A stretch of DNA of 64,000 bases from IMGVR_UViG_3300022866_000322:62001-126000; one strand, 5' to 3'; counted from the first letter of the stretch, positions 3,354 to 60,035 are shown. The notes: generated from the letters alone by a model not told the origin. Made by a program: numbers and translations.

Positions 3354-4511
3354 ATGGCAGAGCTCAACAAAGAGTTCTTCTGCCCAGCTCCCTTTGCAGG
3401 AGGTTATGTTGACGTAAAGAAGATAGCATATCCTTGCTGTAAAATACGTGTAACAGAATTTGAAAATGATCCAGGTTGCGACTTAACTAAAAACAACCTA
3501 TCAACAGCATATCATAGTAAATCTTTTAAAGATCTGAGGGAACAGTTCGAAAACAATGAGAAACCTGATCAATGTCAGGAATGTTGGCGTGCCGAAGACG
3601 CAGGTTGTGAGAGTGAAAGAAATCACCTAACTAAGTTAATCACTACTGATACAAACAGTTTGAATTCGGCTAACGTAGGACTTAAAAAGTTACAAATAGT
3701 GCCGAGTATCACCTGCAATTTCAAATGTAGAATTTGCGACAGTAATTTTAGTTCAGCTATTGCTATGGAAGAAATAAAATTTGCAGAGGCCGCAAATAAA
3801 GAAAAACTTTTATTAAATTTGCAAAATCGCAGTCTAATAGACATAGAATACACTAAAAGAATATTGCAAGACAGTTTATCTGGTTTGACAATGTTACAAG
3901 TATTGGGTGGCGAGCCGACACTGATGAAAAACTTGCCAGAGCTACTAGAGTATATAATTGCACAAGGAGATCACAAACACATAGACCTTGCAATTAACAC
4001 CAATGGCAGTATTTGGTCTGACCGTTTAACGGAAATACTACAAAAATTTAAAAGTTGTAAAATGCTAATTAGCATAGATGCTTTTGGTAAAAGATTTGAA
4101 GATCAACGTGGGGGTTGTTGGCAAGATATTGAAGATAATTTCGACAGATGGTTGACTGTTCCAAACGTTTCTGTAATAATAACAGCAACAGTCAGCATAC
4201 AAAATGTATTATATGTAGATGAAATTGTAGACTTTGTAAAAAGTAAAGGAGTTTTTGTAGGTTGGAATTATGTAGATGACCCTAGTGAATTATCCATAGA
4301 TAACTTAACACAGACGGCAAAAGACTTGGTATACTTGAAGTACATAAATCACGAATCTAACGAGTTGCATGGTATTGCTACTCGGGTAATGCAAACTCCA
4401 GCAGTGTCTGGACAGAAATTTATTAGCCTAATGGACCTTTACGATTTACGTAGAGGTACTAACTTTAAACAATCACATGGAGAGATATATGATGCAATGT
4501 CAGCTAAGTAG
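3354..4511 (+). CDS. Radical SAM protein with N-terminal twitch/SPASM-like Cys cluster
   Basis: CNFKCRIC (CX3CX2C), LGGEPTL, NTNG; N-terminal CPAPF...YPCC...QCQECW. Confidence 0.85.
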   Translation: MAELNKEFFCPAPFAGGYVDVKKIAYPCCKIRVTEFENDPGCDLTKNNLSTAYHSKSFKDLREQFENNEKPDQCQECWRAEDAGCESERNHLTKLITTDTNSLNSANVGLKKLQIVPSITCNFKCRICDSNFSSAIAMEEIKFAEAANKEKLLLNLQNRSLIDIEYTKRILQDSLSGLTMLQVLGGEPTLMKNLPELLEYIIAQGDHKHIDLAINTNGSIWSDRLTEILQKFKSCKMLISIDAFGKRFEDQRGGCWQDIEDNFDRWLTVPNVSVIITATVSIQNVLYVDEIVDFVKSKGVFVGWNYVDDPSELSIDNLTQTAKDLVYLKYINHESNELHGIATRVMQTPAVSGQKFISLMDLYDLRRGTNFKQSHGEIYDAMSAK

Positions 4512-24340: not shown

Positions 24341-24573
24341 GCGACATGTTTAAAGTTATGCGAGCAAAGAAAAAGCGTCCCGTGGACCCTAATGCTCCGC
24401 CTCGTCCTAATCTACTAAGTCAAGATAAAAAACTTAGAGAGCAGGAACAAACAGTGCAACATCTACATTCAGAAGTTTCGTATCTAAAAGATAAACTCAG
24501 TAGTTTGGAAATAAAACTACGAACTCAAGACAATCTAGTTTCACAAATGCTTTCAAGATTAATGAAGAAATGA
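24337..24573 (+). CDS. Hypothetical coiled-coil protein
   Basis: Heptad pattern; ATAAATA 6 nt before the ATG. Confidence 0.7.
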   Translation: MSDMFKVMRAKKKRPVDPNAPPRPNLLSQDKKLREQEQTVQHLHSEVSYLKDKLSSLEIKLRTQDNLVSQMLSRLMKK

Positions 24574-25091
24574 ATTCACTTTATATCGATATGGACGGTG
24601 TGGTCGCAGACTTTGACCGTTATGCACATCAAAAACTAGGAATTGGACCTAGTGAAGGGAAATACCCACAAAACGTGTGGAAAGTACTGATAGAGAACCC
24701 TAGACTATATAGGGATTTAAAACCCACTCCTTATGCTACAGAATTATACGATTTGTGCCACAAAACAGCAAAAAAACTAGACTATAGGGTCGCTTTTTTA
24801 ACTGCTATACCCAGGAAGAATGATGTACAGTACGCTATGTATGATAAGGTAAACTGGGTCCAAAAGAATTTTCCAGACACTCCTGTGTTCTTTGGACCTT
24901 ATAGTAGAGACAAACAGAATCATTGTCGTACTGGTGACATCTTAATTGACGATAGATCAGATAACATTCAAGAATGGAAAGACGCGGGTGGTGTTGGGAT
25001 ACTGCACAAGGACTACGACGTCACTGTTAAAAAACTAAAAGGTTTTGTGGACTTTCATGCACATTTGCCACAAGTCTCGTTGCAACTGTAG
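24570..25091 (+). CDS. HAD-family 5'(3')-deoxyribonucleotidase-like
   Basis: YIDMDGVVADF, FLTA, ILIDDR, AGGVGILH. Confidence 0.88.
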   Translation: MNSLYIDMDGVVADFDRYAHQKLGIGPSEGKYPQNVWKVLIENPRLYRDLKPTPYATELYDLCHKTAKKLDYRVAFLTAIPRKNDVQYAMYDKVNWVQKNFPDTPVFFGPYSRDKQNHCRTGDILIDDRSDNIQEWKDAGGVGILHKDYDVTVKKLKGFVDFHAHLPQVSLQL

Positions 25092-40676: not shown

Positions 40677-42944
40677 ATGTTACAAACAAATCCTGAAATA
40701 GACTATGTAGTACAAGAAGCAACAAAACTAGCAAAGAGCTACGAGCATGAATACATCACAGTAGAACATGTAATGTTAGCCATGATTAGATACGAGCCGC
40801 TATGCGTTCTGTTTGAAAAATCTCAAATCGATGTAAAAACAATAGATGCAGATTTAAGCCTTTATATTTCTGAACAAGAAGATTTAGTGGTCCAAGGTTG
40901 TGAACCAAGAAAAACACATGCGCTCGAAAGAGTATTTAACAGAGCTTTGACTCAACTATTGTTTAGCGGGCGCACACAGCTACAGTTAATGGACTTGCTG
41001 TTAAGTATACAATCAGAAACAAATAGTTTTGCACAGTACTTTGCTGTAAAGCACGGGCTGACACGTGAAAAAATGTTAGAACTGTTTGCACTTGTTAATG
41101 CAGATGGCGAAAATAAGAAAGTAGTTAATGCAAGCAAAGCAGAAAGAATTTTAGAACACTATTGTGACAACCTTAACAAAAAGGTAGCAGAAGGAAAGAT
41201 AGACCCTGTCATTGGCAGAGAATTTGAGACAAACGAGATCATAGAAGTTATGGCTCGTAAGAATAAAAATAATGTGTTACTAATTGGAGATCCGGGTGTA
41301 GGCAAGACTGCAATTGCAGAAGGGCTTGCACTAGCAATCGAAGCAAATACTGTTCCGGAGTTCTTACAAGGTTACGTTGTTTACAATCTTGACATAGGCT
41401 CGTTGCTTGCTGGTAGCAGGTACAGAGGAGACTTTGAAGAAAAAGTACAAGAAGTTATTAAAGCCTTAACTGTTAAAGGGAAGGCAATACTGTTCATTGA
41501 TGAAGCACACCAAATGAAAGGTGCAGGCTCTACAGGGGCAAACGCAAGTGTAGATTTCAGTAACATGATAAAGCCTGCGATCGGCAAAGGCAAGATCAAA
41601 GTAATGGCTTCTACAACGTGGGAAGAGTATTCAAATAGTTTCGAAAAGGATCGTGCATTGATGCGCAGATTCCAGCGTATTACTGTTGATGAGCCTACAG
41701 CAGAAGTAGCAAAAGAAATACTTACAGGGCTGAAAAGTGTATTTGAAAAGTTCCATGGTGGTACAGTAACAAATGCTTCAATTGATGCGGCCGTTGATCT
41801 TAGTGTCAGATACCAAACAGATAAAAAACTGCCAGACAAGGCAATTGATTTAATCGACAGCACATGTGCCAGGTTAAAACTTAGCACTGCTATTTGGACA
41901 GTTACTAGAGCTGATATTATTGACAGCATTGCTAAGATGACTAAGATTCCTGCTGACCAAATTGGAAACCAGAAAGCAATTGTCAACTTCGAAGCGATTA
42001 TAAAAGAAAAACTGTACGGACAGGATCAAGCAGTTGACACTGTATTGGAAAAAATATATGTAAGTAGAGCTGGCTTGAAAGCAATTAACAAGCCCGTTGG
42101 TAGTTTCTTGTTTACAGGACCAACAGGCACAGGCAAAACAGAACTTGCTAAACTGTTAGCAGAAAACCTAGGCATGAAGTTATTACGTTACGACATGAGC
42201 GAATACCAAGAACGTCACACTGTAGCAAAGTTAGTTGGCGCACCTCCAGGGTACGTAGGCTACGATGACGGAAACTTAGGTGGTGGTATGCTTATTAGTG
42301 ATATCGAAAAGAATCCAAACAGTGTTATATTAATGGATGAGATAGAAAAAGCACATCCAGACGTTACTAATGTGCTATTGCAGATGATGGATGAAGGAAT
42401 GATTACCTCAAGCAACGGTAAGAAAGCAAATTGTCGTAACACAGTTATTATCCTTACCAGTAACCTGGGTGCCGCAGACAACGAAAATAACACAATAGGC
42501 TTTGGTGACGAACTACAAAAAACAGGCGAGGATGACAAAGCAGTTAAGAAGTACTTTGCTCCTGAATTTAGGAATAGACTAGACGGGACTGTGAAGTTCA
42601 AGAAACTTGACGAACTAAGCATGCGTAAGATCGTAACAAAGTATCTAGTAGAAATTAATGATTTACTACTAGATAAAAATCTAAAGGTTAAACTTACAGA
42701 ACCAGCAATAGGTGAACTTGTTGAACAAGGATTTGATCCCAAGATGGGAGCAAGGCCATTGCAACGCAAAATGAACGAAGAAATAAAAGTTCCATTGAGT
42801 AAAAAAATGTTGTTTGAGCCCATTGTGCCCGGTAGCATTATAACTGTAGACTTTCGAGATGATAAATTTACCTTTATTGTAGACTCACCAGAAAACACAA
42901 CACACAAAGTAGACGATGATGGATTTATTATACTGGAAGAATAG
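40677..42944 (+). CDS. clpA: ATP-dependent Clp protease ATP-binding subunit ClpA
   Basis: N-domain HEYITVEH; GDPGVGKT and GPTGTGKT Walker A motifs; IGF loop (NTIGFG); GARPLQR. Confidence 0.92.
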   Translation: MLQTNPEIDYVVQEATKLAKSYEHEYITVEHVMLAMIRYEPLCVLFEKSQIDVKTIDADLSLYISEQEDLVVQGCEPRKTHALERVFNRALTQLLFSGRTQLQLMDLLLSIQSETNSFAQYFAVKHGLTREKMLELFALVNADGENKKVVNASKAERILEHYCDNLNKKVAEGKIDPVIGREFETNEIIEVMARKNKNNVLLIGDPGVGKTAIAEGLALAIEANTVPEFLQGYVVYNLDIGSLLAGSRYRGDFEEKVQEVIKALTVKGKAILFIDEAHQMKGAGSTGANASVDFSNMIKPAIGKGKIKVMASTTWEEYSNSFEKDRALMRRFQRITVDEPTAEVAKEILTGLKSVFEKFHGGTVTNASIDAAVDLSVRYQTDKKLPDKAIDLIDSTCARLKLSTAIWTVTRADIIDSIAKMTKIPADQIGNQKAIVNFEAIIKEKLYGQDQAVDTVLEKIYVSRAGLKAINKPVGSFLFTGPTGTGKTELAKLLAENLGMKLLRYDMSEYQERHTVAKLVGAPPGYVGYDDGNLGGGMLISDIEKNPNSVILMDEIEKAHPDVTNVLLQMMDEGMITSSNGKKANCRNTVIILTSNLGAADNENNTIGFGDELQKTGEDDKAVKKYFAPEFRNRLDGTVKFKKLDELSMRKIVTKYLVEINDLLLDKNLKVKLTEPAIGELVEQGFDPKMGARPLQRKMNEEIKVPLSKKMLFEPIVPGSIITVDFRDDKFTFIVDSPENTTHKVDDDGFIILEE

Positions 42945-44823: not shown

Positions 44824-45309
44824 ATGGCTGAAACAGAAAAGCTAAAATTTAGAATTGGTTTAAGTGGAACTAACCCAGACAAACAGCCGCAATATCGAAT
44901 CGGTATAAATGGCAAAGGCAAAGTGTTTGGTGTACTTAGTACTGGTGTTAGCGAGACAGAGTATGTAGAGTTCGAATCATCAGTAACAGAAGGCCCACAA
45001 TGTTTGGAAATAGAACTGCTTAACAAAGGTTATGGCGATACTGTAACAGACGAAAACGGAGAAATAATTAGCGATTTTCTCCTTAATATAGATAGTATTG
45101 AGATAGATGAAATTGATTTAGGTACACTCAAATGGACCCTAAGTGAATATTATCCGATTTATCCGCGTGATTATGTAAATCATGTTTTAGCAGAAACAGG
45201 CAACAAGCCAGACGAAGTTGTTAAAAGTTGTGTAAACATGGGATGGAACGGCAAATGGACACTGCCGTTCGAAAGCCCATTTTACATTTGGCTACTAGAG
45301 AACTTGTAA
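44824..45309 (+). CDS. Hypothetical beta-rich protein
   Basis: PQYRIGING motif resembles PVYRIFVDG in 46757-47086. Confidence 0.7.
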   Translation: MAETEKLKFRIGLSGTNPDKQPQYRIGINGKGKVFGVLSTGVSETEYVEFESSVTEGPQCLEIELLNKGYGDTVTDENGEIISDFLLNIDSIEIDEIDLGTLKWTLSEYYPIYPRDYVNHVLAETGNKPDEVVKSCVNMGWNGKWTLPFESPFYIWLLENL

Positions 45310-45338
45310 GCTAAATATAGCAATAGAGCGGAAGATCA

Positions 45339-46241
45339 ATGTTTATTGCTAATTTATTTGAAAACTATGTAAAAGAGAACAACGGCCCGGAAGTGGTAGT
45401 GGTATATCCAGGCCGTTTTCAACCTTTTCACTTAGGACACAAAGAAGTGTTTAACTCACTCCAAAACAAATTTGGACGTGATAATGTTTATATTGCAACC
45501 AGCAACAAAACAGACGGCGCTAAAAGCCCATTTAACTTTTCCGACAAAACCATATTCATGAATGCGGCTGGTGTACCTAGTGATCGCATTATAGAAGTTT
45601 CAAACCCATACGCTTTACCCCAGCAATTCAACCCAGAAAATACTATCTTTGTTGCAGTAGTAGGTAGTCCCGACAAGAATAGACTCAATCCAGATTCAAC
45701 TAAAAAAGACGGTTCGCCAAGTTATTTCAAGATGTTTGATAGTTTTGAAAAAGCTGAAACCGCAGATCGACATGGCTATGTAATCATTGCAGACGAACGC
45801 AATAAACAGATCACCTTAGGTGACGAAACTGTCGATGTTAGCCACGGCACACAGACTAGAGCCGCTTGGAACGCAGTTAGAAAAGATCCGAAACTGCGTT
45901 CCCAATTTTTAAAACAAATGTATGGCAGAGACGATCCAGAAGTTGGTCGTGTACTGGATAAGATTACCGAAACAGTGAATGAGATGGGTGGTGTAGGTGT
46001 AATTGCAAGCAAAGGGCAAGCAAAAGATCCACGCTATAGTATGAGCTTAACCAAAGACATTAGACCAGGTGAAACCAATAGACAGTTAGCGAAGATGGGA
46101 CTGGGCGCAAAAGTCACCAGTCTCGGCGAAGAGATTGCAACACTTAAAGAAAAGTGGAGTGCAAAGTACAAGAAAAGTATCGACTGTAATAACCCTAAGG
46201 GATTTAGTCAAAAAGCACATTGTGCAGGGAAGAAAAAATGA
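45339..46241 (+). CDS. HxGH nucleotidyltransferase fused to short C-terminal basic modules; probable head-packaged protein
   Basis: YPGRFQPFHLGH, SPFNF; C-terminal EKWSAKYKKSIDCNNPKGFSQKAHC module; CTAAATA at 45311. Confidence 0.75.
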   Translation: MFIANLFENYVKENNGPEVVVVYPGRFQPFHLGHKEVFNSLQNKFGRDNVYIATSNKTDGAKSPFNFSDKTIFMNAAGVPSDRIIEVSNPYALPQQFNPENTIFVAVVGSPDKNRLNPDSTKKDGSPSYFKMFDSFEKAETADRHGYVIIADERNKQITLGDETVDVSHGTQTRAAWNAVRKDPKLRSQFLKQMYGRDDPEVGRVLDKITETVNEMGGVGVIASKGQAKDPRYSMSLTKDIRPGETNRQLAKMGLGAKVTSLGEEIATLKEKWSAKYKKSIDCNNPKGFSQKAHCAGKKK

Positions 46242-46645
46242 GAATATTAGAAATTATAGAAGAAGCAAAATCAAGTTGCCCTATTGCAACACAAGACTTA
46301 GAAGTTAACACTGTTAATAGAGACTTTGCACAAGAAAAGTATAACTACGGTCCACTTAATATTGATGAGCCTGGCAATTATTGGGAAGGTGTTGCAAAAG
46401 AATGGGACACTACTGTAGAAGCCGCTAAAGAATCACTTTGCGGAAACTGTGTAGCATTCGATATAAGTCCACGCATGGAAGACTGCATGCCGGGTCCCGT
46501 GAGCGAAGATGGTGGTAGACTAGGTTACTGTTGGATGCACCAATTCAAATGCCACAGTCTAAGAACATGCCACACATGGGCAAAAGGCGGTCCAATTACT
46601 GACGACGAAGTTAGCTATGACTGGGACAAAAGAAGCAATGACTAA
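46238..46645 (+). CDS. Cys-rich protein with capsid-targeting-like N-terminus
   Basis: MRILEIIEE start; CGNC...C...GYCWMHQFKCHSLRTC. Confidence 0.7.
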   Translation: MRILEIIEEAKSSCPIATQDLEVNTVNRDFAQEKYNYGPLNIDEPGNYWEGVAKEWDTTVEAAKESLCGNCVAFDISPRMEDCMPGPVSEDGGRLGYCWMHQFKCHSLRTCHTWAKGGPITDDEVSYDWDKRSND

Positions 46646-46757
46646 CACTGCAACAGAACAATGGTCATGCAGTGGTGGCAACGAGAGCTGGGATGGGCAC
46701 CCGTTGGTATATATACCAATTGGTAAACCTTGTCCTTATTGCGGAAATAGAGAGTAA
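46638..46757 (+). CDS. 39-aa CHCC-type zinc finger
   Basis: MTNTATEQWSCSGGNESWDGHPLVYIPIGKPCPYCGNRE; overlaps both neighbouring genes; missed by the ORF track. Confidence 0.75.
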   Translation: MTNTATEQWSCSGGNESWDGHPLVYIPIGKPCPYCGNRE

Positions 46758-47086
46758 TGGATACCACACAACATCGAACTATGACGTTTGATGTTAAAGC
46801 GGCCTGGCATGATGAGCCTCCTCCAGTTTATAGAATATTTGTTGATGGTCACTTGATCACCGAACGTACATTTGTATGGGCAGGTCACGAAACATATATA
46901 AAAGAAAATCTTGTGTGTGATTTACCGCCTGGCACACATGTGGTAAAAATTGAAAATGTGTCAACACATGGTGAATTTAAACTAAACAATCTGCTAATAG
47001 ACAACAAAGAACAACCCGAACAGCCAGGAAAAGACGGGTACGATCTCAGGCAGTGGACTTTCGTTTGCGATCTTAAACAGAGCTAA
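46757..47086 (+). CDS. Hypothetical beta-rich protein
   Basis: TAATG-coupled; possible paralogue of 44824-45309. Confidence 0.7.
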   Translation: MDTTQHRTMTFDVKAAWHDEPPPVYRIFVDGHLITERTFVWAGHETYIKENLVCDLPPGTHVVKIENVSTHGEFKLNNLLIDNKEQPEQPGKDGYDLRQWTFVCDLKQS

Positions 47087-47111
47087 ATATAACTATTACA
47101 GGTATTAAACT

Positions 47112-47606
47112 ATGAAAACTAAAGATTTTATTAACGAAGCAGATTGTGCTATAGCCAACGATGCAGAAGTAATGCACCGAGATCACGAAGTACAGATGGC
47201 ACGTGGTCAGTTATATAATGCCGCACAATATGCTATCGAACTTCATCGCATGCTTAAAAACATAAGTGAAAGAGAAGGACTTGAAGGTTGGGTCCAAGCA
47301 AAAATTACCAAAGCAACTGATTATCTAAGTAGTGTTAAGCATCACTTAGAATATGAGCAAGTTAGCCAATCATCAGATGCTATGATGGATTTTGTTCCAG
47401 AAGGTGCAGAATATGCAATGGACAAGATACTAGACGAAACAGCAAGTGCAGGTGCCACAGGTGCAGGCTCTGTTGCTACAGCACCAACTGGTGATGGTGG
47501 TACAGGATTTGAAAAAGCAATTGGTCTTGGTAGAACACCGAACACCTACAAAAACAGTAGCAAGCAGGGCAAAGTTAAATTTGGCAAAGGCGTGTACAAC
47601 AAATGA
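47112..47606 (+). CDS. Modular internal-head-like protein
   Basis: CTAAATA at 47083; MKTKDFINE N-terminus; LEGWVQAKITKATDYL helix module; ETASAGATGAGSVAT module. Confidence 0.7.
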   Translation: MKTKDFINEADCAIANDAEVMHRDHEVQMARGQLYNAAQYAIELHRMLKNISEREGLEGWVQAKITKATDYLSSVKHHLEYEQVSQSSDAMMDFVPEGAEYAMDKILDETASAGATGAGSVATAPTGDGGTGFEKAIGLGRTPNTYKNSSKQGKVKFGKGVYNK

Positions 47607-48160
47607 GCTCGATGAAAGATCTACTGGAAAAAATGGACGACAACTATCCATTTGCTGGCGAAAAGGCAACGCCTAAACAAATACCTGGTGATCAAGTTCG
47701 TGGTACAGACGCAGTTAAGATTGCCAAGCGTACAGTTCCTTACCAAAAGCACCCACTCCAGGGAAAACTTGTAGGTGGTGGTGCCGCTGAAGAGTCTGTA
47801 GAGCAAATCGCAGAACAGTTACGCAAAGAGCTTGAAGAGTATGGTGCTCCTGGATCAGGGATGAGCCGTGGGTCAAGTATGGACCGAACAGAAGTTTCAC
47901 AGTTACGCAGAGATCAAAAAGCACAACAACAGCAAGCTGATTCGCAAGAAGATAATCTTGAAAAACAAATTAAGGGGTTGACACAGCAATCACTGGCAGT
48001 ATCAAAACAACCAGTGGCTCCACCTAATCCAAACGATCCAGCATCTGTTGCACAGTTTGCCGCGGCAAGTAATCAAAAGAGGGCAGAGAAGCAACAACTA
48101 GCACTGCAAAGAAGAGCTCTTAACCAACAGAAGAAACAGTTCACTCAGTATAGCGAGTAA
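47603..48160 (+). CDS. Modular hypothetical protein with Q-rich coiled-coil C-terminus
   Basis: Coupled ORF within the same cluster. Confidence 0.65.
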   Translation: MSSMKDLLEKMDDNYPFAGEKATPKQIPGDQVRGTDAVKIAKRTVPYQKHPLQGKLVGGGAAEESVEQIAEQLRKELEEYGAPGSGMSRGSSMDRTEVSQLRRDQKAQQQQADSQEDNLEKQIKGLTQQSLAVSKQPVAPPNPNDPASVAQFAAASNQKRAEKQQLALQRRALNQQKKQFTQYSE

Positions 48161-48165
48161 TCACA

Positions 48166-48957
48166 GTGTATATTAATAACTTCACAAAAAATAAAAAGCA
48201 AAAGCCAGCACCTATTGTAGATAAGTCTACACAATATCAACTTGATAGAAATGCAAATCTTGCAACTGGCACAATAGGTGATGCATATGGTTCACTTAGT
48301 CAACCAAAAAGCACTACGCCACAAGCATATACTCCCCCAGTTAAGACAGTAACAAAGGGGTCAAAGCAAACAGTAAAACCAGTTAAGTTTAATCCCAGGG
48401 GCGGACCCATAATTGCACGTAATGGATCAAAGCAAACAGCAGGATCAACGCAAACAGTAAAACCAGTTAAGTTTAATCCCAGGGGCGGACCCATAATTGC
48501 ACGTGAAGAAATGGAAGAGTTTATAGAGTTTATTGATTCACACGACAATGAAATTATGACCGAAGCACAGTTTGATGAAGCCGCAGGTGAGAAAGACGCT
48601 TGCTACCATAAGGTCAAGAGTCGTTACAAAGTGTGGCCTAGTGCATACGCAAGTGGTGCATTAGTACAGTGCCGTAAAAAAGGTGCTAAGAACTGGGGCA
48701 ACAGTAAAAAGAAAAGCAACGAAAATGTAGAAATGGATAGCAAATTGGATGTTGACAAGTTGTTAACTAGCCTTAGAAATAGTAAAACCACTAATAGTGA
48801 CAGACTTGCAGATGCAATTGAAATGCGGTTCATGCATAACATGACCTTTAAAGAGATAGGTGAAGAATTAAATGTTGGTCCTAGTAGAGCCGCTACGATT
48901 ATTGAAAAGGCACTACGTTTGCTAAGGTGGCATGCCGCTAGGTCACCTGGGTCGTAA
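48166..48957 (+). CDS. Modular protein: tandem repeat, two-Cys basic module, sigma70 region-4-like HTH
   Basis: KDACYHKVKSRYKVWPSAYASGALVQC module; C-terminal MRFMHNMTFKEIGEELNVGPSRAATIIEKALRLLR. Confidence 0.65.
   Translation: MYINNFTKNKKQKPAPIVDKSTQYQLDRNANLATGTIGDAYGSLSQPKSTTPQAYTPPVKTVTKGSKQTVKPVKFNPRGGPIIARNGSKQTAGSTQTVKPVKFNPRGGPIIAREEMEEFIEFIDSHDNEIMTEAQFDEAAGEKDACYHKVKSRYKVWPSAYASGALVQCRKKGAKNWGNSKKKSNENVEMDSKLDVDKLLTSLRNSKTTNSDRLADAIEMRFMHNMTFKEIGEELNVGPSRAATIIEKALRLLRWHAARSPGS
48366..48504 (+). repeat. Exact 55-nt direct repeat, 84-nt period, in frame
   Basis: GCAAACAGTAAAACC...ATTGCACGT at 48366-48420 and 48450-48504 (QTVKPVKFNPRGGPIIAR twice). Confidence 0.9.
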
Positions 48958-48985
48958 AAAAAACTTAATTAGGCATAGAATAGAA

Positions 48986-49588
48986 ATGAGACTAACAGAC
49001 TTTATCACAGAAAAATGCTGGAAAGGCTACGAAAAGAAGGGCATGAAAACCATGTTCGGCAAACGTGTGCCTAACTGTGTTAAAAATGAATCTGCAGATG
49101 CAGTATCACTAGACGAGCATGGCAACTTGATATTTGAAGATGGTGTTAGTGAAGACCTAAAGAAATGGTTCAAAGAGAAGTGGGTCCGCTTTGGTCCAGA
49201 TGGTAAGATACGTGGCGACTGTGCGAGAGGATCAAGCAAAGAAGGTAAGCCAAAGTGTTTACCACAATCAAAAGCACAAGCACTAGGCAAGAAAGGCCGT
49301 TCAAGCAGTGCGGCTAAAAAGCGTAGAGAAGATCCCAAAAAGAATCGCAAAGGCAAAGCCAAGAACGTTGCTACTAAGACACGTGGTATGAAAGAACAAG
49401 GACCACCTGATTACAGCACTGGTAAGTCAGCTGATCAAAAAGGAATAAGCCCTAGGACAGTTGGTAAAGTAATACTAGACCCAGAAGGTACTGCACGAGA
49501 GGCTGGCGGTAGGGTATTACAAAAAGGCATGAATGCAGTTAAGTGCGCAATTACCCAAGATCCAACCTACTGCAACCTATCCAAATAA
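48986..49588 (+). CDS. Modular basic internal-head-like protein
   Basis: MRLTDFITE start; KCWKGYEKKGMKTMFGKRVPNC module; EDLKKWFKEKW...GDC...KPKC module. Confidence 0.7.
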   Translation: MRLTDFITEKCWKGYEKKGMKTMFGKRVPNCVKNESADAVSLDEHGNLIFEDGVSEDLKKWFKEKWVRFGPDGKIRGDCARGSSKEGKPKCLPQSKAQALGKKGRSSSAAKKRREDPKKNRKGKAKNVATKTRGMKEQGPPDYSTGKSADQKGISPRTVGKVILDPEGTAREAGGRVLQKGMNAVKCAITQDPTYCNLSK

Positions 49589-49658: not shown

Positions 49659-49919
49659 ATGTCATCAAGAATGTTCAGTTCAGAGCAAAAAGCAAAACTC
49701 ACACAGGTTGTTAACGAAGGTATTGCAGTAATGCAAGAAGTAGAAGATCTCAGCGCAGGTTTGAGTGATACAATCAAAGCAGTTGCAGAAGAAATGGAAA
49801 TTAAACCCAGTATTCTTAAGAAAGCTGTGCGTATTGCATTTAAATCCAAACTCACAGACGAAAACGCTGATCACGAAGATCTAAACACGATTCTCGAAAC
49901 TGTCGGCCGTACCCTTTAA
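49659..49919 (+). CDS. Small dsDNA-binding protein (T4 DsbA/GapR-like)
   Basis: AGGAG SD; IKAVAEEMEIKPSILKKAVRI helical pattern. Confidence 0.6.
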   Translation: MSSRMFSSEQKAKLTQVVNEGIAVMQEVEDLSAGLSDTIKAVAEEMEIKPSILKKAVRIAFKSKLTDENADHEDLNTILETVGRTL

Positions 49920-50202: not shown

Positions 50203-52866
50203 ATGAGTTACATAGACGCATTATTTGATAGAAAAGCAGATCGCATACATGTCGTGGAGCGTGTCAATGGGGAACGTGTATACAAAGAGTTTCCTGCTAA
50301 CTATGTGTTCTACTATGATGATCCCAAGGGCAAGTTCCGTACAGTGTATGGTAGCCCTGTGAATAGGTTCAGTACACGCAACGGCAAAGAGTTTCAAAAA
50401 GAAATGCGTGTGAACGGCGGAAAGAGATTATGGGAATCGGATATTAATCCAGTGTTCCGCTGTTTAGAAGAAAACTACCTGGGACAACAATCACCTAAAC
50501 TGCAAACATGCTTCTTTGATATTGAGGTCGACTTTGACCCTGAACGTGGATTCAGTCCACCTAGTGATCCGTTCAATGCAGTAACTGCAATTACTGTGTA
50601 CAACGACTGGATGGACAAGTTGATCACACTGGCTATTCCTCCCAAAGGACTTAGCTGGGAAAGTGCAGAAGAACTATGCAAAGACTTCGAAAACTGTTTC
50701 TTATTCGAACGTGAAGAAGAACTGTTGGGCACATTCTTAGATTTAATTGAAGATGCTGACATACTGTCGGGTTGGAACAGTGAAGGTTTTGATATTCCTT
50801 ACTTGGTCATGCGCATAAAGCGTGTACTTAGCAACGATGACAATAGACGTTGGTGCCTATGGGGGCAACTACCCAAGCAACGCACATTTGAACGTTTTGG
50901 TGCAGAGAATCTAACATTTGATTTAATAGGCAGAGTGCATATGGACTATATGCAACTGTATCGCAAATACACATACGAAGAACGTCACAGTTATTCACTA
51001 GATGCAATTGGTGAACACGAACTAGGTGAACGTAAAACACAATACGAAGGCTCACTTGATCAGTTGTATAACAAAGACTTCAAGACCTTTATTGAGTACA
51101 ATCGACAGGATACCGCGTTGCTAGGCAAGATGGACAAGAAGTTACGTTTTTTAGATCTTGCAAACGAACTAGCGCATGATAATACCGTACTGCTACAAAC
51201 AACAATGGGTGCAGTGGCAGTTACAGAGCAGGCTATTATTAATGAGGCACATCAGCGTGGTATGGTTGTACCTAATAGGAAAGGAAAAGAAGAACATGGA
51301 GAAACGCAAGCGGCAGGTGCCTATGTTGCTCATCCCAAAAAAGGGATGCACGACTGGATCGGAGCAATCGACATCAACTCACTCTATCCCAGTGCTATTA
51401 GGGCCCTCAACATGGCGCAAGAAAGCATCATCGGACAACTCAGACCGATAATGACAGACAGGTACATCAAGGAAAAACAGGACGCTGGAAAGAGTTTTGC
51501 TGATAGTTGGGAAAACATGTTCGGTAGCCTTGAGTATCAAGCGGTAATGAATGGAGAGCCTGGCACAGAGATTACTGTAGACTGGGAAGCAGATGGTAGC
51601 AGTGATATAATGAGTGCCGCTGACATTTGGAGACTGATATTTGACAGTAACAAACCTTGGATGATCAGTGCTAACGGTACTATATTCAGTTATGAAAAAA
51701 AGGCTATTGTACCAGGATTGTTAGAACGTTGGTATGCCGAACGTAAAGAACTACAAGCAAAGAAGCGTGACGCTGAGTCCGATGATGATATTGCATTCTG
51801 GGATAAACGACAGTTGGTTAAGAAGATTAACTTGAACAGTTTGTATGGCGCTATTCTTAATCCAGGTTGTAGATTCTTTGACAAACGTATTGGACAAAGT
51901 ACTACACTATCCGGTCGTATCATTGCCAAGCACATGGATGCGTTTGTTAACGAAGCCATAACAGGTGTATATGATCACACTGGTGATGCAGTTGTGTATG
52001 GTGATACTGATTCTTGTTACTTCACTGCATGGCCCGCTATTAAAGATGATGTCGAAAGCGGTAAAATGGAATGGAACAAAGACATTGCTACACAAGTGTA
52101 TGATAGCATCTCAGACCAACTTAATGAAAGTTTTCCATTGTTCATGGAAAAAGCCTGTCACTGCCCACGTGAAAATGGCGCATTGATCAAAGGTGGTAGA
52201 GAGATTACTGCAACTAAAGGCTTGTACATTAAGAAGAAGCGTTATGCGGCACTGATATATGACATGGAAGGTACTAGACTCGACGGCGGCGGCAAACCAG
52301 GCAAAGTTAAAGCCATGGGACTTGACTTGAAGCGAAGTGATACTCCGCCGGTTGTACAGAATTTCCTAAGTGATATACTACTTGGTGTACTAACAGGATC
52401 AACCAAAGAACAGATATATGATAAGGTTCGCGACTTTAAAATTGCATTCCAACAGCGTCCAGCATGGGAAAAAGGTACTCCCAAGCGTGTAAACAATCTA
52501 ACCAAGTACACTGCCGCTGAAAAAGCGCAAGGCAAAGCAAACATGCCTGGCCATGTAAGAGCCGCAATGAACTGGAACTATCTCAAACGCATGCATGGTG
52601 ACAACTACAGTCAAAACATTGTTGATGGTATGAAAACTATTGTGTGCAAACTTAAAGAGAACCCAATGGGTTACAAGAGTGTAGGGTATCCAACAGATGT
52701 TTCACATATCCCACAGTGGTTTAAGGACTTGCCATTTGATGATGCACTAATGGAGGCAACTATTGTGGATCAGAAAGTAGAGAACCTATTAAGTGTACTT
52801 AAATGGGATATTCCTGCACATACCAACATCAAAACAACATTTGACGACTTGTTCAGCTTCGAATAA
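50203..52866 (+). CDS. Family B DNA polymerase (T4 gp43-like)
   Basis: Exo motifs FDIEVD, WNSEGFDIPY, YNRQD; polymerase motifs DINSLYPS, KINLNSLYG, YGDTDS, KKKRY. Confidence 0.96.
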   Translation: MSYIDALFDRKADRIHVVERVNGERVYKEFPANYVFYYDDPKGKFRTVYGSPVNRFSTRNGKEFQKEMRVNGGKRLWESDINPVFRCLEENYLGQQSPKLQTCFFDIEVDFDPERGFSPPSDPFNAVTAITVYNDWMDKLITLAIPPKGLSWESAEELCKDFENCFLFEREEELLGTFLDLIEDADILSGWNSEGFDIPYLVMRIKRVLSNDDNRRWCLWGQLPKQRTFERFGAENLTFDLIGRVHMDYMQLYRKYTYEERHSYSLDAIGEHELGERKTQYEGSLDQLYNKDFKTFIEYNRQDTALLGKMDKKLRFLDLANELAHDNTVLLQTTMGAVAVTEQAIINEAHQRGMVVPNRKGKEEHGETQAAGAYVAHPKKGMHDWIGAIDINSLYPSAIRALNMAQESIIGQLRPIMTDRYIKEKQDAGKSFADSWENMFGSLEYQAVMNGEPGTEITVDWEADGSSDIMSAADIWRLIFDSNKPWMISANGTIFSYEKKAIVPGLLERWYAERKELQAKKRDAESDDDIAFWDKRQLVKKINLNSLYGAILNPGCRFFDKRIGQSTTLSGRIIAKHMDAFVNEAITGVYDHTGDAVVYGDTDSCYFTAWPAIKDDVESGKMEWNKDIATQVYDSISDQLNESFPLFMEKACHCPRENGALIKGGREITATKGLYIKKKRYAALIYDMEGTRLDGGGKPGKVKAMGLDLKRSDTPPVVQNFLSDILLGVLTGSTKEQIYDKVRDFKIAFQQRPAWEKGTPKRVNNLTKYTAAEKAQGKANMPGHVRAAMNWNYLKRMHGDNYSQNIVDGMKTIVCKLKENPMGYKSVGYPTDVSHIPQWFKDLPFDDALMEATIVDQKVENLLSVLKWDIPAHTNIKTTFDDLFSFE

Positions 52867-58469: not shown

Positions 58470-60035
58470 ATGTTATTAGATCTTCTCCGGAAGGTATATG
58501 ATTTTGATATGACCGTAGCGTTAGAAACCATTGCGACTATGCCTTCTTCTTTTTTATACAAAAAGATAAGTCCATTTATTAAACAACAATATCCTAACAA
58601 CTACAAGTTCATATTTTTGAACAACAGTGATGTCAACCAAGAAGTATTACTGCACGTTATACAAACAATAGAATTGTGTAAGATTCCTAATGCATTTGTA
58701 TTGGTCATTACTAATCAAACCAGAGTGCATGATTTTTTTGCAAGTAATAACATTGAAGTTAAAAAAAATAATATTCCTGACGAACTAGAAACAGGGAATT
58801 ACACACCAACTTTTAATGTCCAAGAGAAACTTTGTCCTTATCCGTGGGCTGGCATTCATGTAGAGCCACAAGGTTACGTTAAGCCGTGCTGTGATTTTTA
58901 TGGTTCATACTTAAAGCATAACGGTACTCTATTGGATGCTAGTAAAGATTCGTTTGAATACATGCAAAATTCAAGCGACATGAAATTGATAAGGGAACAG
59001 TTTAGACAAGGCATAAAGCCAGAAGGATGTAAGAAGAACTGTTTAGATGCGCCAGAGGGCAAATCTACCAGGTTTACGCATTCAAAGTACAAGCTGAACA
59101 ATGTATACGGAGAAATAGACTGGGAAGGCGAAGGTGAGATGAAGTTTCTTAACGGACACTTCAGTAACTTGTGCAACCTCGGTTGTGTGATTTGTGAACC
59201 GCGATCTAGTTCGATACTGTCTGTAGAGGAACTTAAAGATTCACAGTACGCCAACATTAAACAAGATCCACGATATAAAAAGTTACAAATCCATCTAAAC
59301 ACATTAGACGAAAACAGCACTATATGGAAAGAACTGGATAAAAATATTTCAACTATACGTAACTTTGAAATATTGGGTGGCGAACCACTGCTAAATAAAA
59401 ATATCTTACGAGTCATCGAAAGATTAATTGATTCAGGGCATAGTAAACATTGTGTTTTTCAAATTATAACCAATGGTACACAATTCCCTGATATATGCAA
59501 CCAGTTACATCACTTTAAAGAGGTATTCATACACATAAGTGTAGACAACACAAACGAGCGATTTGAATATGAACGCTATTTGGGAAAATGGGATAAGTGG
59601 GTAAGTAACGTAAGCCAATTTGATAATTTAACAAAACAACACAATCATATTAAATTACATTTTGCAATAGCAGTAAGTATTTTAAATGCATTGTACTTGC
59701 CAGAACTGTTATCGCATATTTCAAGATACAACTACCAAACATTTTACTTTGGTGATGTACATAAACCGTCTCAGTTATCGTTGAACAACTTGACATTAGA
59801 AGCAAAAGATGTTCTAATAGAAAGACTATCAATGTTTACTGATCAATATCCAAAACTAAATTTTGTGCTGAACTTACTAAAAAATTCTAAACAAGTTGAT
59901 GGAACAGAATTTTGTAACTTTATACAAAACAAAGATAAATTACGAAATTTAAACTTTATGGATACGCATGAGGAAATAGGAAATCTTATGGGATATTCAT
60001 CTTTTAACATTCAAGGAGAAACAAATGGCCGCTAG
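58470..60035 (+). CDS. Radical SAM protein with N-terminal extension and twitch-like domain
   Basis: CPYPW...VKPCC...GCKKNC, CNLGCVIC, LGGEPLL, ITNGT. Confidence 0.85.
   Translation: MLLDLLRKVYDFDMTVALETIATMPSSFLYKKISPFIKQQYPNNYKFIFLNNSDVNQEVLLHVIQTIELCKIPNAFVLVITNQTRVHDFFASNNIEVKKNNIPDELETGNYTPTFNVQEKLCPYPWAGIHVEPQGYVKPCCDFYGSYLKHNGTLLDASKDSFEYMQNSSDMKLIREQFRQGIKPEGCKKNCLDAPEGKSTRFTHSKYKLNNVYGEIDWEGEGEMKFLNGHFSNLCNLGCVICEPRSSSILSVEELKDSQYANIKQDPRYKKLQIHLNTLDENSTIWKELDKNISTIRNFEILGGEPLLNKNILRVIERLIDSGHSKHCVFQIITNGTQFPDICNQLHHFKEVFIHISVDNTNERFEYERYLGKWDKWVSNVSQFDNLTKQHNHIKLHFAIAVSILNALYLPELLSHISRYNYQTFYFGDVHKPSQLSLNNLTLEAKDVLIERLSMFTDQYPKLNFVLNLLKNSKQVDGTEFCNFIQNKDKLRNLNFMDTHEEIGNLMGYSSFNIQGETNGR

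What the first reader, a model, noticed from the sequence alone, without database searches (positions are those of the whole stretch)
45339..49588. Cluster of probable head-packaged polyproteins made of short basic two-cysteine modules separated by protease-like sites
Seen: consecutive genes start with MFIANLFE, MRILEIIEE, MKTKDFINE and MRLTDFITE. Internally, 25-50 aa modules each follow a hydrophobic-x-E site (LKE-KWS, FDE-AAG, ITE-KCW, VSE-DLK, LDE-TAS). Four modules are Lys/Arg-rich and carry exactly two Cys (C-NNPKGFSQKAH-C; C-YHKVKSRYKVWPSAYASGALVQ-C; C-WKGYEKKGMKTMFGKRVPN-C; C-ARGSSKEGKPK-C). Established: T4 internal proteins use the capsid-targeting sequence MKTYQEFIAE, and gp21 cleaves after I/L-x-E. 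Inference: polyproteins processed in the prohead into a library of small disulfide-looped cationic peptides that condense DNA or are injected as host-takeover or anti-defence effectors.
Basis: partly seen in the sequence, partly recalled or inferred. Interest (0 to 1): 0.75.

Follow-up and report, generated by a model that had tools for sequence, protein, structure and literature searches.

The report
Capsid-targeted modular mini-protein gene cluster
A large marine phage has a row of genes whose proteins begin with a T4-like capsid-targeting leader and are strings of tiny, highly conserved, mostly basic two-cysteine domains joined at sites that fit the phage's own head protease. They are probably cut up and carried inside the head, and the same domains occur in thousands of unstudied marine phage proteins.

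Summary
Seven consecutive + strand genes lie at 45339-49588. Five start with a 8-9 residue leader of the form M-[KR]-x-x-[DE]-[FIV]-[IL]-x-E. T4 IPII and IPIII start with MKTYQEFIAE.

The genes carry mini-domains that also occur, concatenated, in a cyanomyophage protein that mass spectrometry found in virions (S-SCSM1 gp029). Module C occurs in at least 7983 protein clusters.

In unrelated sequence contexts the modules are preceded by hydrophobic-x-Glu. P3 is hydrophobic in 81 of 90 unique contexts, against 28% for all Glu in the same proteins. The genome encodes a gp21-family (S77) prohead protease.

As a negative control, small phages without S77 (2 complete isolates and 7 contigs at least 90% complete) encode the same modules as separate leaderless genes, and the Glu is not conserved there.

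- g1 is mainly a nucleotidyltransferase.
- g6 ends in a sigma-70 region 4 domain.
- g2-g4 are acidic.
- g5 also has a leader.

Cleavage, packaging in this phage, disulfides and function are all inferred, not shown.

Verdict: a new variant of T4-type internal head proteins, namely protease-linked modular polyproteins.

The parts
45339..46241 (+). g1, 300 aa. Leader MFIANLFE, then a cytidylyltransferase/NMNAT-like domain (aa 22-94 matched), a linker, then LKE followed by module A.
   Evidence: PF01467 scores 28.1 bits against a cut-off of 21. phrog_395 and phrog_3041, cytidyltransferase. NMNAT-like proteins are repeatedly found in cyanophage virion proteomes (PMC9602691).
46152..46238 (+). Module A (g1 aa 272-300): a basic tail, net +8, two Cys 11 residues apart.
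   Evidence: 69-93% identical to cyanomyophage proteins, including S-SM2 SSM2_108 next to the polyprotein gene. In 11 of 11 contexts it is preceded by h-x-E, several of them N-terminal leaders such as MRATEFITE and MKTFKQFQE.
46238..46645 (+). g2, 135 aa, leader MRILEIIEE, acidic (pI 4.6), 7 Cys. The Cys-rich C-terminal part gives only a weak DUF7140 match.
   Evidence: Homologues in L024 and L068 have different leaders of the same pattern, MKLILENFRKFITE and MRNFINLLE.
46757..47086 (+). g3, 109 aa, no leader, acidic, no family match. Probably not part of the system.
   Evidence: One weak homologue in the related loci.
47112..47606 (+). g4, 164 aa. Leader MKTKDFINE, then helical module B (aa 24-81, nt 47181-47354), then LDE followed by a basic tail (aa 110-164, net +6).
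   Evidence: Module B is shared with S-SM2 and S-SCSM1 polyproteins and with L026, L033 and L045 at 55% identity.
47603..48160 (+). g5, 185 aa, leader MSSMKDLLE. A conserved block ends in ...HPLQGKLVG, followed by a low-complexity Gln-rich tail.
   Evidence: The same leader and block are fused to module C in P0064, P0047 and P0027.
48166..48957 (+). g6, 263 aa, GTG start. Basic N-terminal part with a duplicated 28-aa unit, then MTE and FDE sites, module C, then a sigma-70 region 4 domain.
   Evidence: Relatives start MYINNF, MYLNNLLKE or MHLNNLFNE.
48580..48735 (+). Module C (g6 aa 139-190): the DACYHKVKSRY..WPSAYASG..C..NWG unit, two invariant Cys 22 residues apart.
   Evidence: At least 596 IMG/VR stretches, 365 phage records, at least 7983 protein clusters. 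92% amino-acid identity, but only about 50% identity at third codon positions. Weak DUF5872 match.
48799..48927 (+). Sigma-70 region 4 helix-turn-helix (g6 aa 212-254).
   Evidence: PF04545, E = 8e-8, 32.1 bits against a cut-off of 24.1. In the AF2 model this part is helical with pLDDT about 80.
48986..49588 (+). g7, 200 aa. Leader MRLTDFITE, module D, a disordered linker with three h-x-E sites, module E, then a C-terminal tail with a third Cys pair.
   Evidence: AF2 gives pLDDT below 50 for aa 1-7, 37-53 and 131-176, and structured parts at aa 10-33 and 55-115.
49013..49090 (+). Module D (g7 aa 10-35): a CW.GY..KG...FGK....C beta-hairpin, two Cys 19 residues apart.
   Evidence: 49 unique upstream contexts, 46 of them with hydrophobic P3 before the nearest Glu. 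Strands at 15-23 and 26-33 in the model.
49154..49396 (+). Module E (g7 aa 57-137): L.KWF..KWV....G.I.G.C........PKC, followed by a basic helix. Net +19, two invariant Cys 11 residues apart.
   Evidence: C79 and C91 are invariant in A1. It occurs as a separate gene with its own leader in L027, L010 and L041, and as a leaderless gene in small phages.
49659..49919 (+). Flanking gene: a gp33/DsbA-like late-transcription co-activator. It is syntenic with the cluster.
   Evidence: phrog_12534 1e-19, phrog_639 5e-7. Homologues lie downstream of the module genes in 22 related loci.
45309..45319 (+). AGCTAAATATA, ending 19 nt before the g1 ATG. The same 11-mer lies at 47081-47091, ending 20 nt before the g4 ATG. 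Possibly a late-type promoter.
   Evidence: The 7-mer core is not enriched genome-wide, so this is only a lead.

Best explanation
The cluster encodes cargo for the phage head.

Proposed mechanism (inferred):
1. Each protein carries an N-terminal leader of 8-9 residues, M-[KR]-x-x-[DE]-[FIV]-[IL]-x-E, that works like the T4 capsid-targeting sequence and brings the protein into the scaffolding core of the prohead.
2. The phage's gp21-family serine protease (Peptidase_S77, encoded elsewhere in the genome next to portal, scaffold and capsid genes) removes the leader.
3. The protease also cuts after Glu at the hydrophobic-x-Glu sites in the disordered linkers. This releases compact mini-domains: modules A, C, D and E (basic, each with one invariant Cys pair), module B (helical), and larger cargo such as the g1 nucleotidyltransferase and the g6 module C plus sigma region 4 unit.
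4. The products stay with the packaged DNA. They either neutralise DNA charge or enter the host with it.

Shown: the leaders, the sites, their statistics, the presence of the protease, the link between sites and S77 across phages, and virion presence of a cyanophage homologue.

Inferred: targeting, cleavage, retention in the head, disulfides and the function after release.
For: - Leaders and sites are in the sequence.
- T4 IPII and IPIII begin MKTYQEFIAE and IPI begins MKTFKEF...ITE, read from NC_000866. In T4, residues 8 and 10 (I and E) govern processing and residues 4 and 7 govern targeting (PMC9026906). T4, phiKZ and SPN3US head proteases all cut after Glu (PMC5694885).
- S77 protease is in this genome at 92.3 bits. 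It sits beside an acidic head protein starting MNKYEQLIEYIINE and a scaffold starting MLDAIKPLIDSGIINE.
- P3 is hydrophobic in 81 of 90 unique contexts upstream of modules A, D, E and F, against 28% for all Glu. h-x-E is present in 85-100% of contexts against a 33% background.
- The upstream sequences are unrelated to each other, and 21 distinct N-terminal leaders share one consensus.
- Modules D and E are in one gene or in two genes, each with its own leader.
- N-termini of module C proteins: 36 of 72 have h-x-E in the first 11 residues, against 46 of 285 genome genes.
- AF2 shows a disordered leader and linkers and structured modules.
- Negative control: in CRP-901, C75C1 and 80 C75C1-like loci the modules are separate leaderless genes with E, Q, D or A at the position before the module. 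None of their records has S77, including 7 at 90% completeness or more. S-SM2, S-SCSM1 and Mel-JY01 do have S77.
- S-SCSM1 gp029, built of modules D, E, C and DUF6321, is annotated as a virion protein from mass spectrometry (PMC9602691). The same paper reports NMNAT-like enzymes in three cyanophage virion proteomes.
Against: - There is no proteomic or biochemical evidence for this phage or its close relatives.
- The link between S77 and junction sites rests on few independent lineages: jumbo phages and cyanomyophages against two groups of small phages.
- For modules D and E the Glu sits at a nearly fixed distance from the module, so part of the signal could belong to the module itself.
- Many cyanophage polyproteins start directly with a module and have no N-terminal leader. 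Targeting there would need another route.
- g2-g4 are acidic and g3 has no leader.
- The cluster lies among replication and transcription genes, not head genes. T4 IP genes do too.
- The complex prediction of protease with g7 gave no answer.
- Module C was not confidently folded.
Confidence: 0.6

Rival explanations
1. The proteins are cytoplasmic nucleic-acid-binding or transcription accessory factors that are never packaged. The basic modules bind DNA or RNA during infection. The acidic leaders and linkers are only spacers or autoinhibitory segments.
For: g6 carries a sigma-70 region 4 domain. The cluster is syntenic with a gp33/DsbA-like late-transcription gene in 22 loci and lies next to PolB. 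The modules are strongly basic.
Against: This does not explain the T4-CTS-like pattern at the exact N-terminus, the hydrophobic P3 in unrelated contexts, the loss of leader and Glu in phages without S77, or the virion detection of the cyanophage polyprotein (PMC9602691).
Confidence: 0.15
2. The proteins are virion-associated but not processed. They would be intact minor head or DNA-associated proteins, and the h-x-E motif would be a docking element rather than a cleavage site.
For: The virion detection of S-SCSM1 gp029 came from tryptic peptides and says nothing about cleavage. In T4, Asp at P1 still allows targeting without cleavage.
Against: Glu at P1 is nearly invariant, which is the requirement for cleavage and not for targeting. 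Gene fission occurs exactly at the junctions.
Confidence: 0.12
3. The genes encode RiPP-like precursors: a leader peptide plus Cys-containing cores, matured by the radical SAM/SPASM enzymes encoded in the same genome.
For: Radical SAM genes lie at window 3354-4511 and 58470-60035, the latter with a SPASM domain. Another lies outside the window at genome 44001-45206, near the second leader cluster (by motif only).
Against: Five complete module-carrying phage genomes have no radical SAM gene. The cores are 25-80 residue folded domains, some fused to enzymes. The radical SAM genes are 9 kb or more away. The pattern follows S77, not radical SAM.
Confidence: 0.04
4. The modules are selfish mobile mini-genes, and the shared flanks are recombination scars with no function for the virion.
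For: The modules shuffle extensively, occur in thousands of architectures and are fused to unrelated enzymes.
Against: Purifying selection is very strong: 92% amino-acid identity with about 50% identity at third codon positions. The flanks are conserved as a residue pattern, not as DNA or peptide sequence.
Confidence: 0.05

Closest known systems
T4 internal proteins IPI, IPII and IPIII with their capsid-targeting sequence
   Same: Both have an N-terminal leader of about 10 residues ending in [DE]-F-I-x-E, a gp21-family protease in the genome, mostly basic products, genes scattered among non-structural genes, and high plasticity of the gene set (PMC9026906).
   Different: There is no sequence similarity in the mature parts. 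Here several mini-domains are strung in one protein with internal sites. The domains are highly conserved rather than fast evolving. They have invariant Cys pairs. Enzymes and a sigma region 4 domain are among the cargo.
Cyanomyophage T4-GC119 protein between terminase genes g16 and g17 (S-SM2 SSM2_109; S-SCSM1 gp029, a virion protein)
   Same: It contains the same modules B, C, D and E, and module A in the neighbouring gene, with the same h-x-E borders. S77 protease is present.
   Different: In cyanophages there is one long polyprotein of 500-700 aa, also holding DUF192 and DUF6321, often without an N-terminal leader, in the structural gene block. Here the modules are spread over several shorter genes, each with a leader, next to gp33-like and PolB genes.
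T4 core proteins gp22, gp67 and gp68, cut into internal peptides, and the processed head and ejection proteins of phiKZ and SPN3US
   Same: A head protease of the same superfamily cuts several times after Glu inside the prohead (PMC5694885).
   Different: Those fragments are mostly scaffold debris or propeptides that leave the head. The giant-phage motif is A/S-x-E. Here the predicted products are folded, conserved domains.
Adenovirus core proteins pVII and pX (mu), cut by the viral protease (from general knowledge, not tested here)
   Same: Basic DNA-associated peptides are produced from precursors by a capsid-resident protease.
   Different: This is an unrelated virus, protease and sequences. 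It is an analogy only.
Pfam DUF5872 and DUF6321
   Same: Module C aligns with the first 44-49 positions of DUF5872. DUF6321 is a partner module in the cyanophage polyproteins.
   Different: The g6 match is below the curated cut-off. Neither family has a known function, and no paper discusses them beyond listing the name.

Membership tests
T4-type CTS-bearing internal head proteins | N-terminal leader of about 10 residues with hydrophobic P4 and P3 and Glu at P1 | tested here: met
   g1, g2, g4, g5 and g7 have it. The consensus from 21 leaders matches T4 MKTYQEFIAE at P5, P4, P3 and P1.
T4-type CTS-bearing internal head proteins | gp21-family (S77) prohead protease encoded by the same phage | tested here: met
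   PF03420 at 92.3 bits at genome 210603-211052, within the head gene block.
T4-type CTS-bearing internal head proteins | Leader removed by cleavage after Glu in the prohead | not testable with these tools
   Only indirect evidence: site statistics and the S77 correlation.
T4-type CTS-bearing internal head proteins | Protein present in mature virions and ejected with the DNA | not testable with these tools
   A homologous cyanophage polyprotein was detected in virions by mass spectrometry (PMC9602691). There are no data for this phage.
T4-type CTS-bearing internal head proteins | Basic mature product | tested here: inconclusive
   The g1 tail is +8, the g6 fragment +8 and g7 module E +19. g2, g3 and g4 have pI 4.6-5.7.
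T4-type CTS-bearing internal head proteins | Sequence similarity to T4 IPI, IPII or IPIII mature parts | tested here: not met
   The best blastp E-value is 0.67. T4-type IPs are not conserved among T4 relatives either (PMC9026906).
Cyanomyophage T4-GC119 virion polyprotein | Shared module set (B, C, D, E) with h-x-E borders | tested here: met
Cyanomyophage T4-GC119 virion polyprotein | A single gene located between terminase genes g16 and g17 | tested here: not met
   Here there are several genes upstream of the gp33-like and PolB genes.
Pfam DUF5872 | Score above the gathering cut-off (27.5 bits) | tested here: not met
   16.2 bits, E = 0.017, covering only profile positions 12-49 of 116.
Sigma70_r4 (PF04545), for the g6 C-terminus | Score above the gathering cut-off (24.1 bits) | tested here: met
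   32.1 bits, E = 8e-8, aa 212-254. Helical in the model with pLDDT about 80.
Cytidylyltransferase-like (PF01467), for the g1 N-terminal domain | Score above the gathering cut-off (21 bits) | tested here: met
   28.1 bits, aa 22-94, containing the GRFQPFHLGH motif.
RiPP precursor with radical SAM maturase | A maturase co-occurs with the precursor genes across genomes | tested here: not met
   There is no PF04055 match in 5 complete module-carrying phage genomes. Radical SAM genes are present in this window but 9 kb or more away.

The most novel reading that the evidence does not exclude
Marine jumbo phages and cyanomyophages share a combinatorial set of highly conserved mini-proteins. These are delivered into the capsid as leader-tagged polyproteins and released there by the gp21-type protease. 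If so, one of the commonest uncharacterised domain sets in marine viromes would be virion cargo: protamine-like DNA partners, or proteins injected with the genome. That cargo would include enzymes and a sigma region 4 unit able to act on the host at the moment of entry.
Probability: 0.4. Interest if true: 0.8.

Novelty: new variant of a known kind. Interest (0 to 1): 0.68.

Why it matters
T4 internal proteins are the textbook case of proteins carried in a phage head and injected with the DNA. One of them, IPI, is known to block a host restriction system (general knowledge).

If this reading is right, the same delivery route is used on a much larger scale in the sea. A shared set of mini-domains would be combined freely into polyproteins and cut apart by the head protease.

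It would give a testable function to thousands of hypothetical proteins in marine viromes. It would explain why cyanophage virion proteomes contain the gp16-gp17 protein and NMNAT-like enzymes. It would also provide a simple sequence rule (leader plus h-x-E) for predicting capsid cargo in uncultured T4-like and jumbo phages.

Tried and rejected
- Megablast of the region against 50,697 phage records found no match.
- No sequence relatives exist among PDB chains for g6, g7 or the cyanophage polyprotein.
- Literature searches for the module C motif string, DUF6321 and DUF5872 found nothing useful. The S-SCSM1 supplement held as text had no matching entries.
- The ESM Atlas returned only 'hypothetical protein' clusters.
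- Complex prediction of the S77 protease with g7 residues 2-70 gave 'no answer'. It is evidence neither way.
- Foldseek of the g7 model against the PDB gave nothing significant. The best E-value was 1.7. A 24-residue hairpin resembles the alpha-defensin hairpin at E about 3, which is not evidence.
- AF2 of g6 residues 115-263 folded the sigma region 4 part but not module C.
I left those rows out.
- The T4 late promoter TATAAATA occurs once in the window, below chance.
- TRF did not report the g6 duplication. The repeat finder did.
- tblastn with the C75C1 module E protein found only itself, probably because of low-complexity filtering.
- The RiPP reading was considered and rejected.

Full report
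**Setting**

The window is bases 62001-126000 of a 221-kb IMG/VR viral contig that CheckV rates 63% complete, so the phage is a jumbo phage of roughly 350 kb. Its family B DNA polymerase (50203-52866) is nearest to those of the jumbo phages Phosso (50%), Atu_ph07 and 121Q (about 42%). The genome encodes a T4 gp21-family prohead protease (Peptidase_S77, 92 bits). The protease sits in a head block with the portal, an acidic 307-aa protein, the scaffold and the capsid protein.

**Observation**

Seven tightly packed + strand genes fill 45339-49588.

- g1, g2, g4 and g7 start as stated. g7 starts at 48986, as shown by homologues whose frame opens just upstream of that Met.
- g5 also has a leader, MSSMKDLLE.
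- g6 starts with GTG and has a degenerate leader. Relatives of g6 start MHLNNLFNE or MYLNNLLKE.
- g3 has no leader.

**What the genes contain**

- g1 is a cytidylyltransferase/NMNAT-like enzyme. After LKE it carries a 29-residue basic two-Cys tail, module A.
- g2 is acidic and Cys-rich.
- g4 holds a helical module B and a basic tail.
- g5 holds a conserved block and a Gln-rich tail.
- g6 has a duplicated basic unit, then module C, then a sigma-70 region 4 domain (E = 8e-8).
- g7 holds module D (a hairpin), a linker, module E (net +19) and a tail with a third Cys pair.

The label 'short basic two-cysteine modules' therefore fits modules A, C, D and E, but not the whole cluster.

**The modules are real, widespread units**

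- Module C matches 365 phage records, almost all cyanomyophages. It also matches at least 596 IMG/VR stretches and at least 7983 protein clusters in the large protein collection, all unnamed.
- In cyanomyophages, modules B, C, D and E plus DUF192 and DUF6321 are concatenated in one protein of 500-700 aa between terminase genes g16 and g17. Module A lies in the gene just upstream.
- The S-SCSM1 copy of this protein is annotated as a virion protein. [quoted passage not shown]
- Across 82 copies, module C is 92% identical in protein to the window copy, but only 75% identical in DNA and about 50% identical at third codon positions. This indicates old divergence under very strong constraint, not recent transfer.

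**Junctions and leaders**

- In 80 related loci, the 20 residues upstream of the module anchors contain hydrophobic-x-Glu in 11/11 (module A), 43/46 (D), 22/24 (E), 9/9 (F) and 61/72 (C) unique contexts. The background is 33%.
- Taking the Glu nearest to modules A, D, E and F, P3 is hydrophobic in 81 of 90 unique contexts (mostly L or I). The figure for all Glu in the same proteins is 28%.
- The sequences further upstream are unrelated to each other.
- Where a module is the first element of a gene, it is preceded by a leader. Twenty-one distinct leaders give the consensus M-[KR]-x-x-[DE]-[IVF]-[IL]-x-E.
- T4 IPII and IPIII begin MKTYQEFIAE and IPI begins MKTFKEF...ITE.
- In T4, positions 8 and 10 of the leader control processing and positions 4 and 7 control targeting (PMC9026906). 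The T4, phiKZ and SPN3US head proteases all cut after Glu (PMC5694885).
- Modules D and E occur in one gene, as in g7, or as two genes each with its own leader. Gene borders and junctions are therefore interchangeable.
- In this genome, 14 of 285 genes carry the leader pattern. Five are in this cluster and three are in a second cluster outside the window. One is the acidic head protein next to the protease.
- The AF2 model of g7 (mean pLDDT 57, a low-confidence model) has a disordered leader and linkers and moderately confident modules.

**Negative control**

In Roseobacter phage CRP-901 and phage C75C1, the same modules are separate tiny genes next to head genes. They have no acidic leader. 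In 80 C75C1-like IMG/VR loci, module E always starts two to four residues after the Met, and the residue before the module is E, Q, D or A. The C-like module starts directly at the Met.

None of these records has an S77 protease, including seven rated 90% complete or more. This genome, five related fragments, S-SM2, S-SCSM1 and Mel-JY01 all have one. The hydrophobic-x-Glu element is therefore not needed by the module fold, and it goes with the protease. The caveat is that this contrast covers only a few independent lineages.

**Most likely mechanism (confidence about 0.6)**

The leaders target the proteins to the prohead core. The S77 protease then removes the leaders and cuts the linkers. The folded modules and larger cargo remain with the DNA.

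What the released modules do is open. Their charge suggests DNA binding. The invariant Cys pairs suggest disulfide or metal clamps in the extracellular particle. The enzyme and sigma region 4 cargo suggest action in the host after injection. None of this was testable here.

**Rivals**

- Cytoplasmic DNA-binding or transcription factors. This is supported by the sigma domain and by synteny with a gp33-like gene in 22 loci.
- Virion proteins that are not cut.
- RiPP-like precursors. Radical SAM/SPASM genes are in the window but absent from five complete module-carrying genomes.
- Selfish mini-genes. This is contradicted by the strength of selection.

**Novelty**

The T4 capsid-targeting sequence and internal proteins are established. 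I found no paper describing these modules, their junction rule, or polyprotein processing in cyanophages or marine jumbo phages. The library searched lacks most subscription journals, so this is not proof that none exists.

I rate the finding as a new variant of a known kind.

Noticed in passing
window 48799-48927 (g6 aa 212-254): A sigma-70 region 4 helix-turn-helix is fused behind module C, with no h-x-E site between the two. Close relatives keep this fusion under different N-terminal parts (P0008-P0018). It could be a packaged or early-acting factor that touches host RNA polymerase.
   Followed up: partly
window 48351-48420 and 48435-48504: An 84-nt tandem duplication (93% identical) inside g6 doubles a 28-residue basic unit (..TVKPVKFNPRGGPIIAR..). 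Relatives such as P0008 have one copy.
   Followed up: yes
window 45309-45319 and 47081-47091: The same 11-mer, AGCTAAATATA, ends 19-20 nt before the start codons of g1 and g4. It resembles a T4-type late promoter core, but the 7-mer is not enriched in the genome.
   Followed up: partly
outside the window: genome 39672-41068 (locus L087:672-2065): A second cluster of leader-bearing genes. It holds a SprT-like protein (MNILRSIME, HExxH), an M78-like protein (MHIKDIINE, HExxH) and a 65-aa basic two-Cys protein (MRAREFVIE, then module F starting FADGK). The Pfam matches are below the cut-offs.
   Followed up: partly
window 3354-4511 and 58470-60035: Two radical SAM genes, the second with a SPASM domain. 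A third radical SAM-like gene lies outside the window at genome 44001-45206. Their substrates are unknown.
   Followed up: partly
window 40677-42944: A 755-aa double AAA+ ATPase of the ATP-dependent protease (Clp-like) kind, phrog_4871 at E = 1e-238, lies 2.4 kb upstream of the cluster.
   Followed up: no
window 24570-25091: A HAD-type nucleotidase-like protein (DMDGVVADF motif). Its homologues in other contigs (L047, L045, L033) are part of longer proteins that also carry the mini-modules, so enzymes are repeatedly fused to this module set.
   Followed up: partly
window 46238-46645 (g2): The Cys pattern in the C-terminal half (C..C, then ..C....F.C.....C..W..GGP) recalls high-potential iron-sulfur proteins. 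Only a weak DUF7140 match was found (15.5 bits). The likeness is from memory and was not tested.
   Followed up: no
window 46617-46757: A 46-codon ORF with a CPYC motif overlaps the end of g2 and fills the gap before g3. It is unclear whether it is a gene.
   Followed up: no
outside the window: genome 7939-8286 (locus L088:439-783): A 115-aa protein starts MRITDIIRT.., like the g7-type leaders but without the Glu. It is preceded by CTAAATATT 6 nt before the ATG. It has no family match.
   Followed up: partly
loci L006-L085: CheckV completeness of 7-68% for contigs of 30-197 kb implies that most carriers of leader-tagged module genes are jumbo phages of 150-450 kb related to this one. This group appears to be common in marine metagenomes.
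   Followed up: partly
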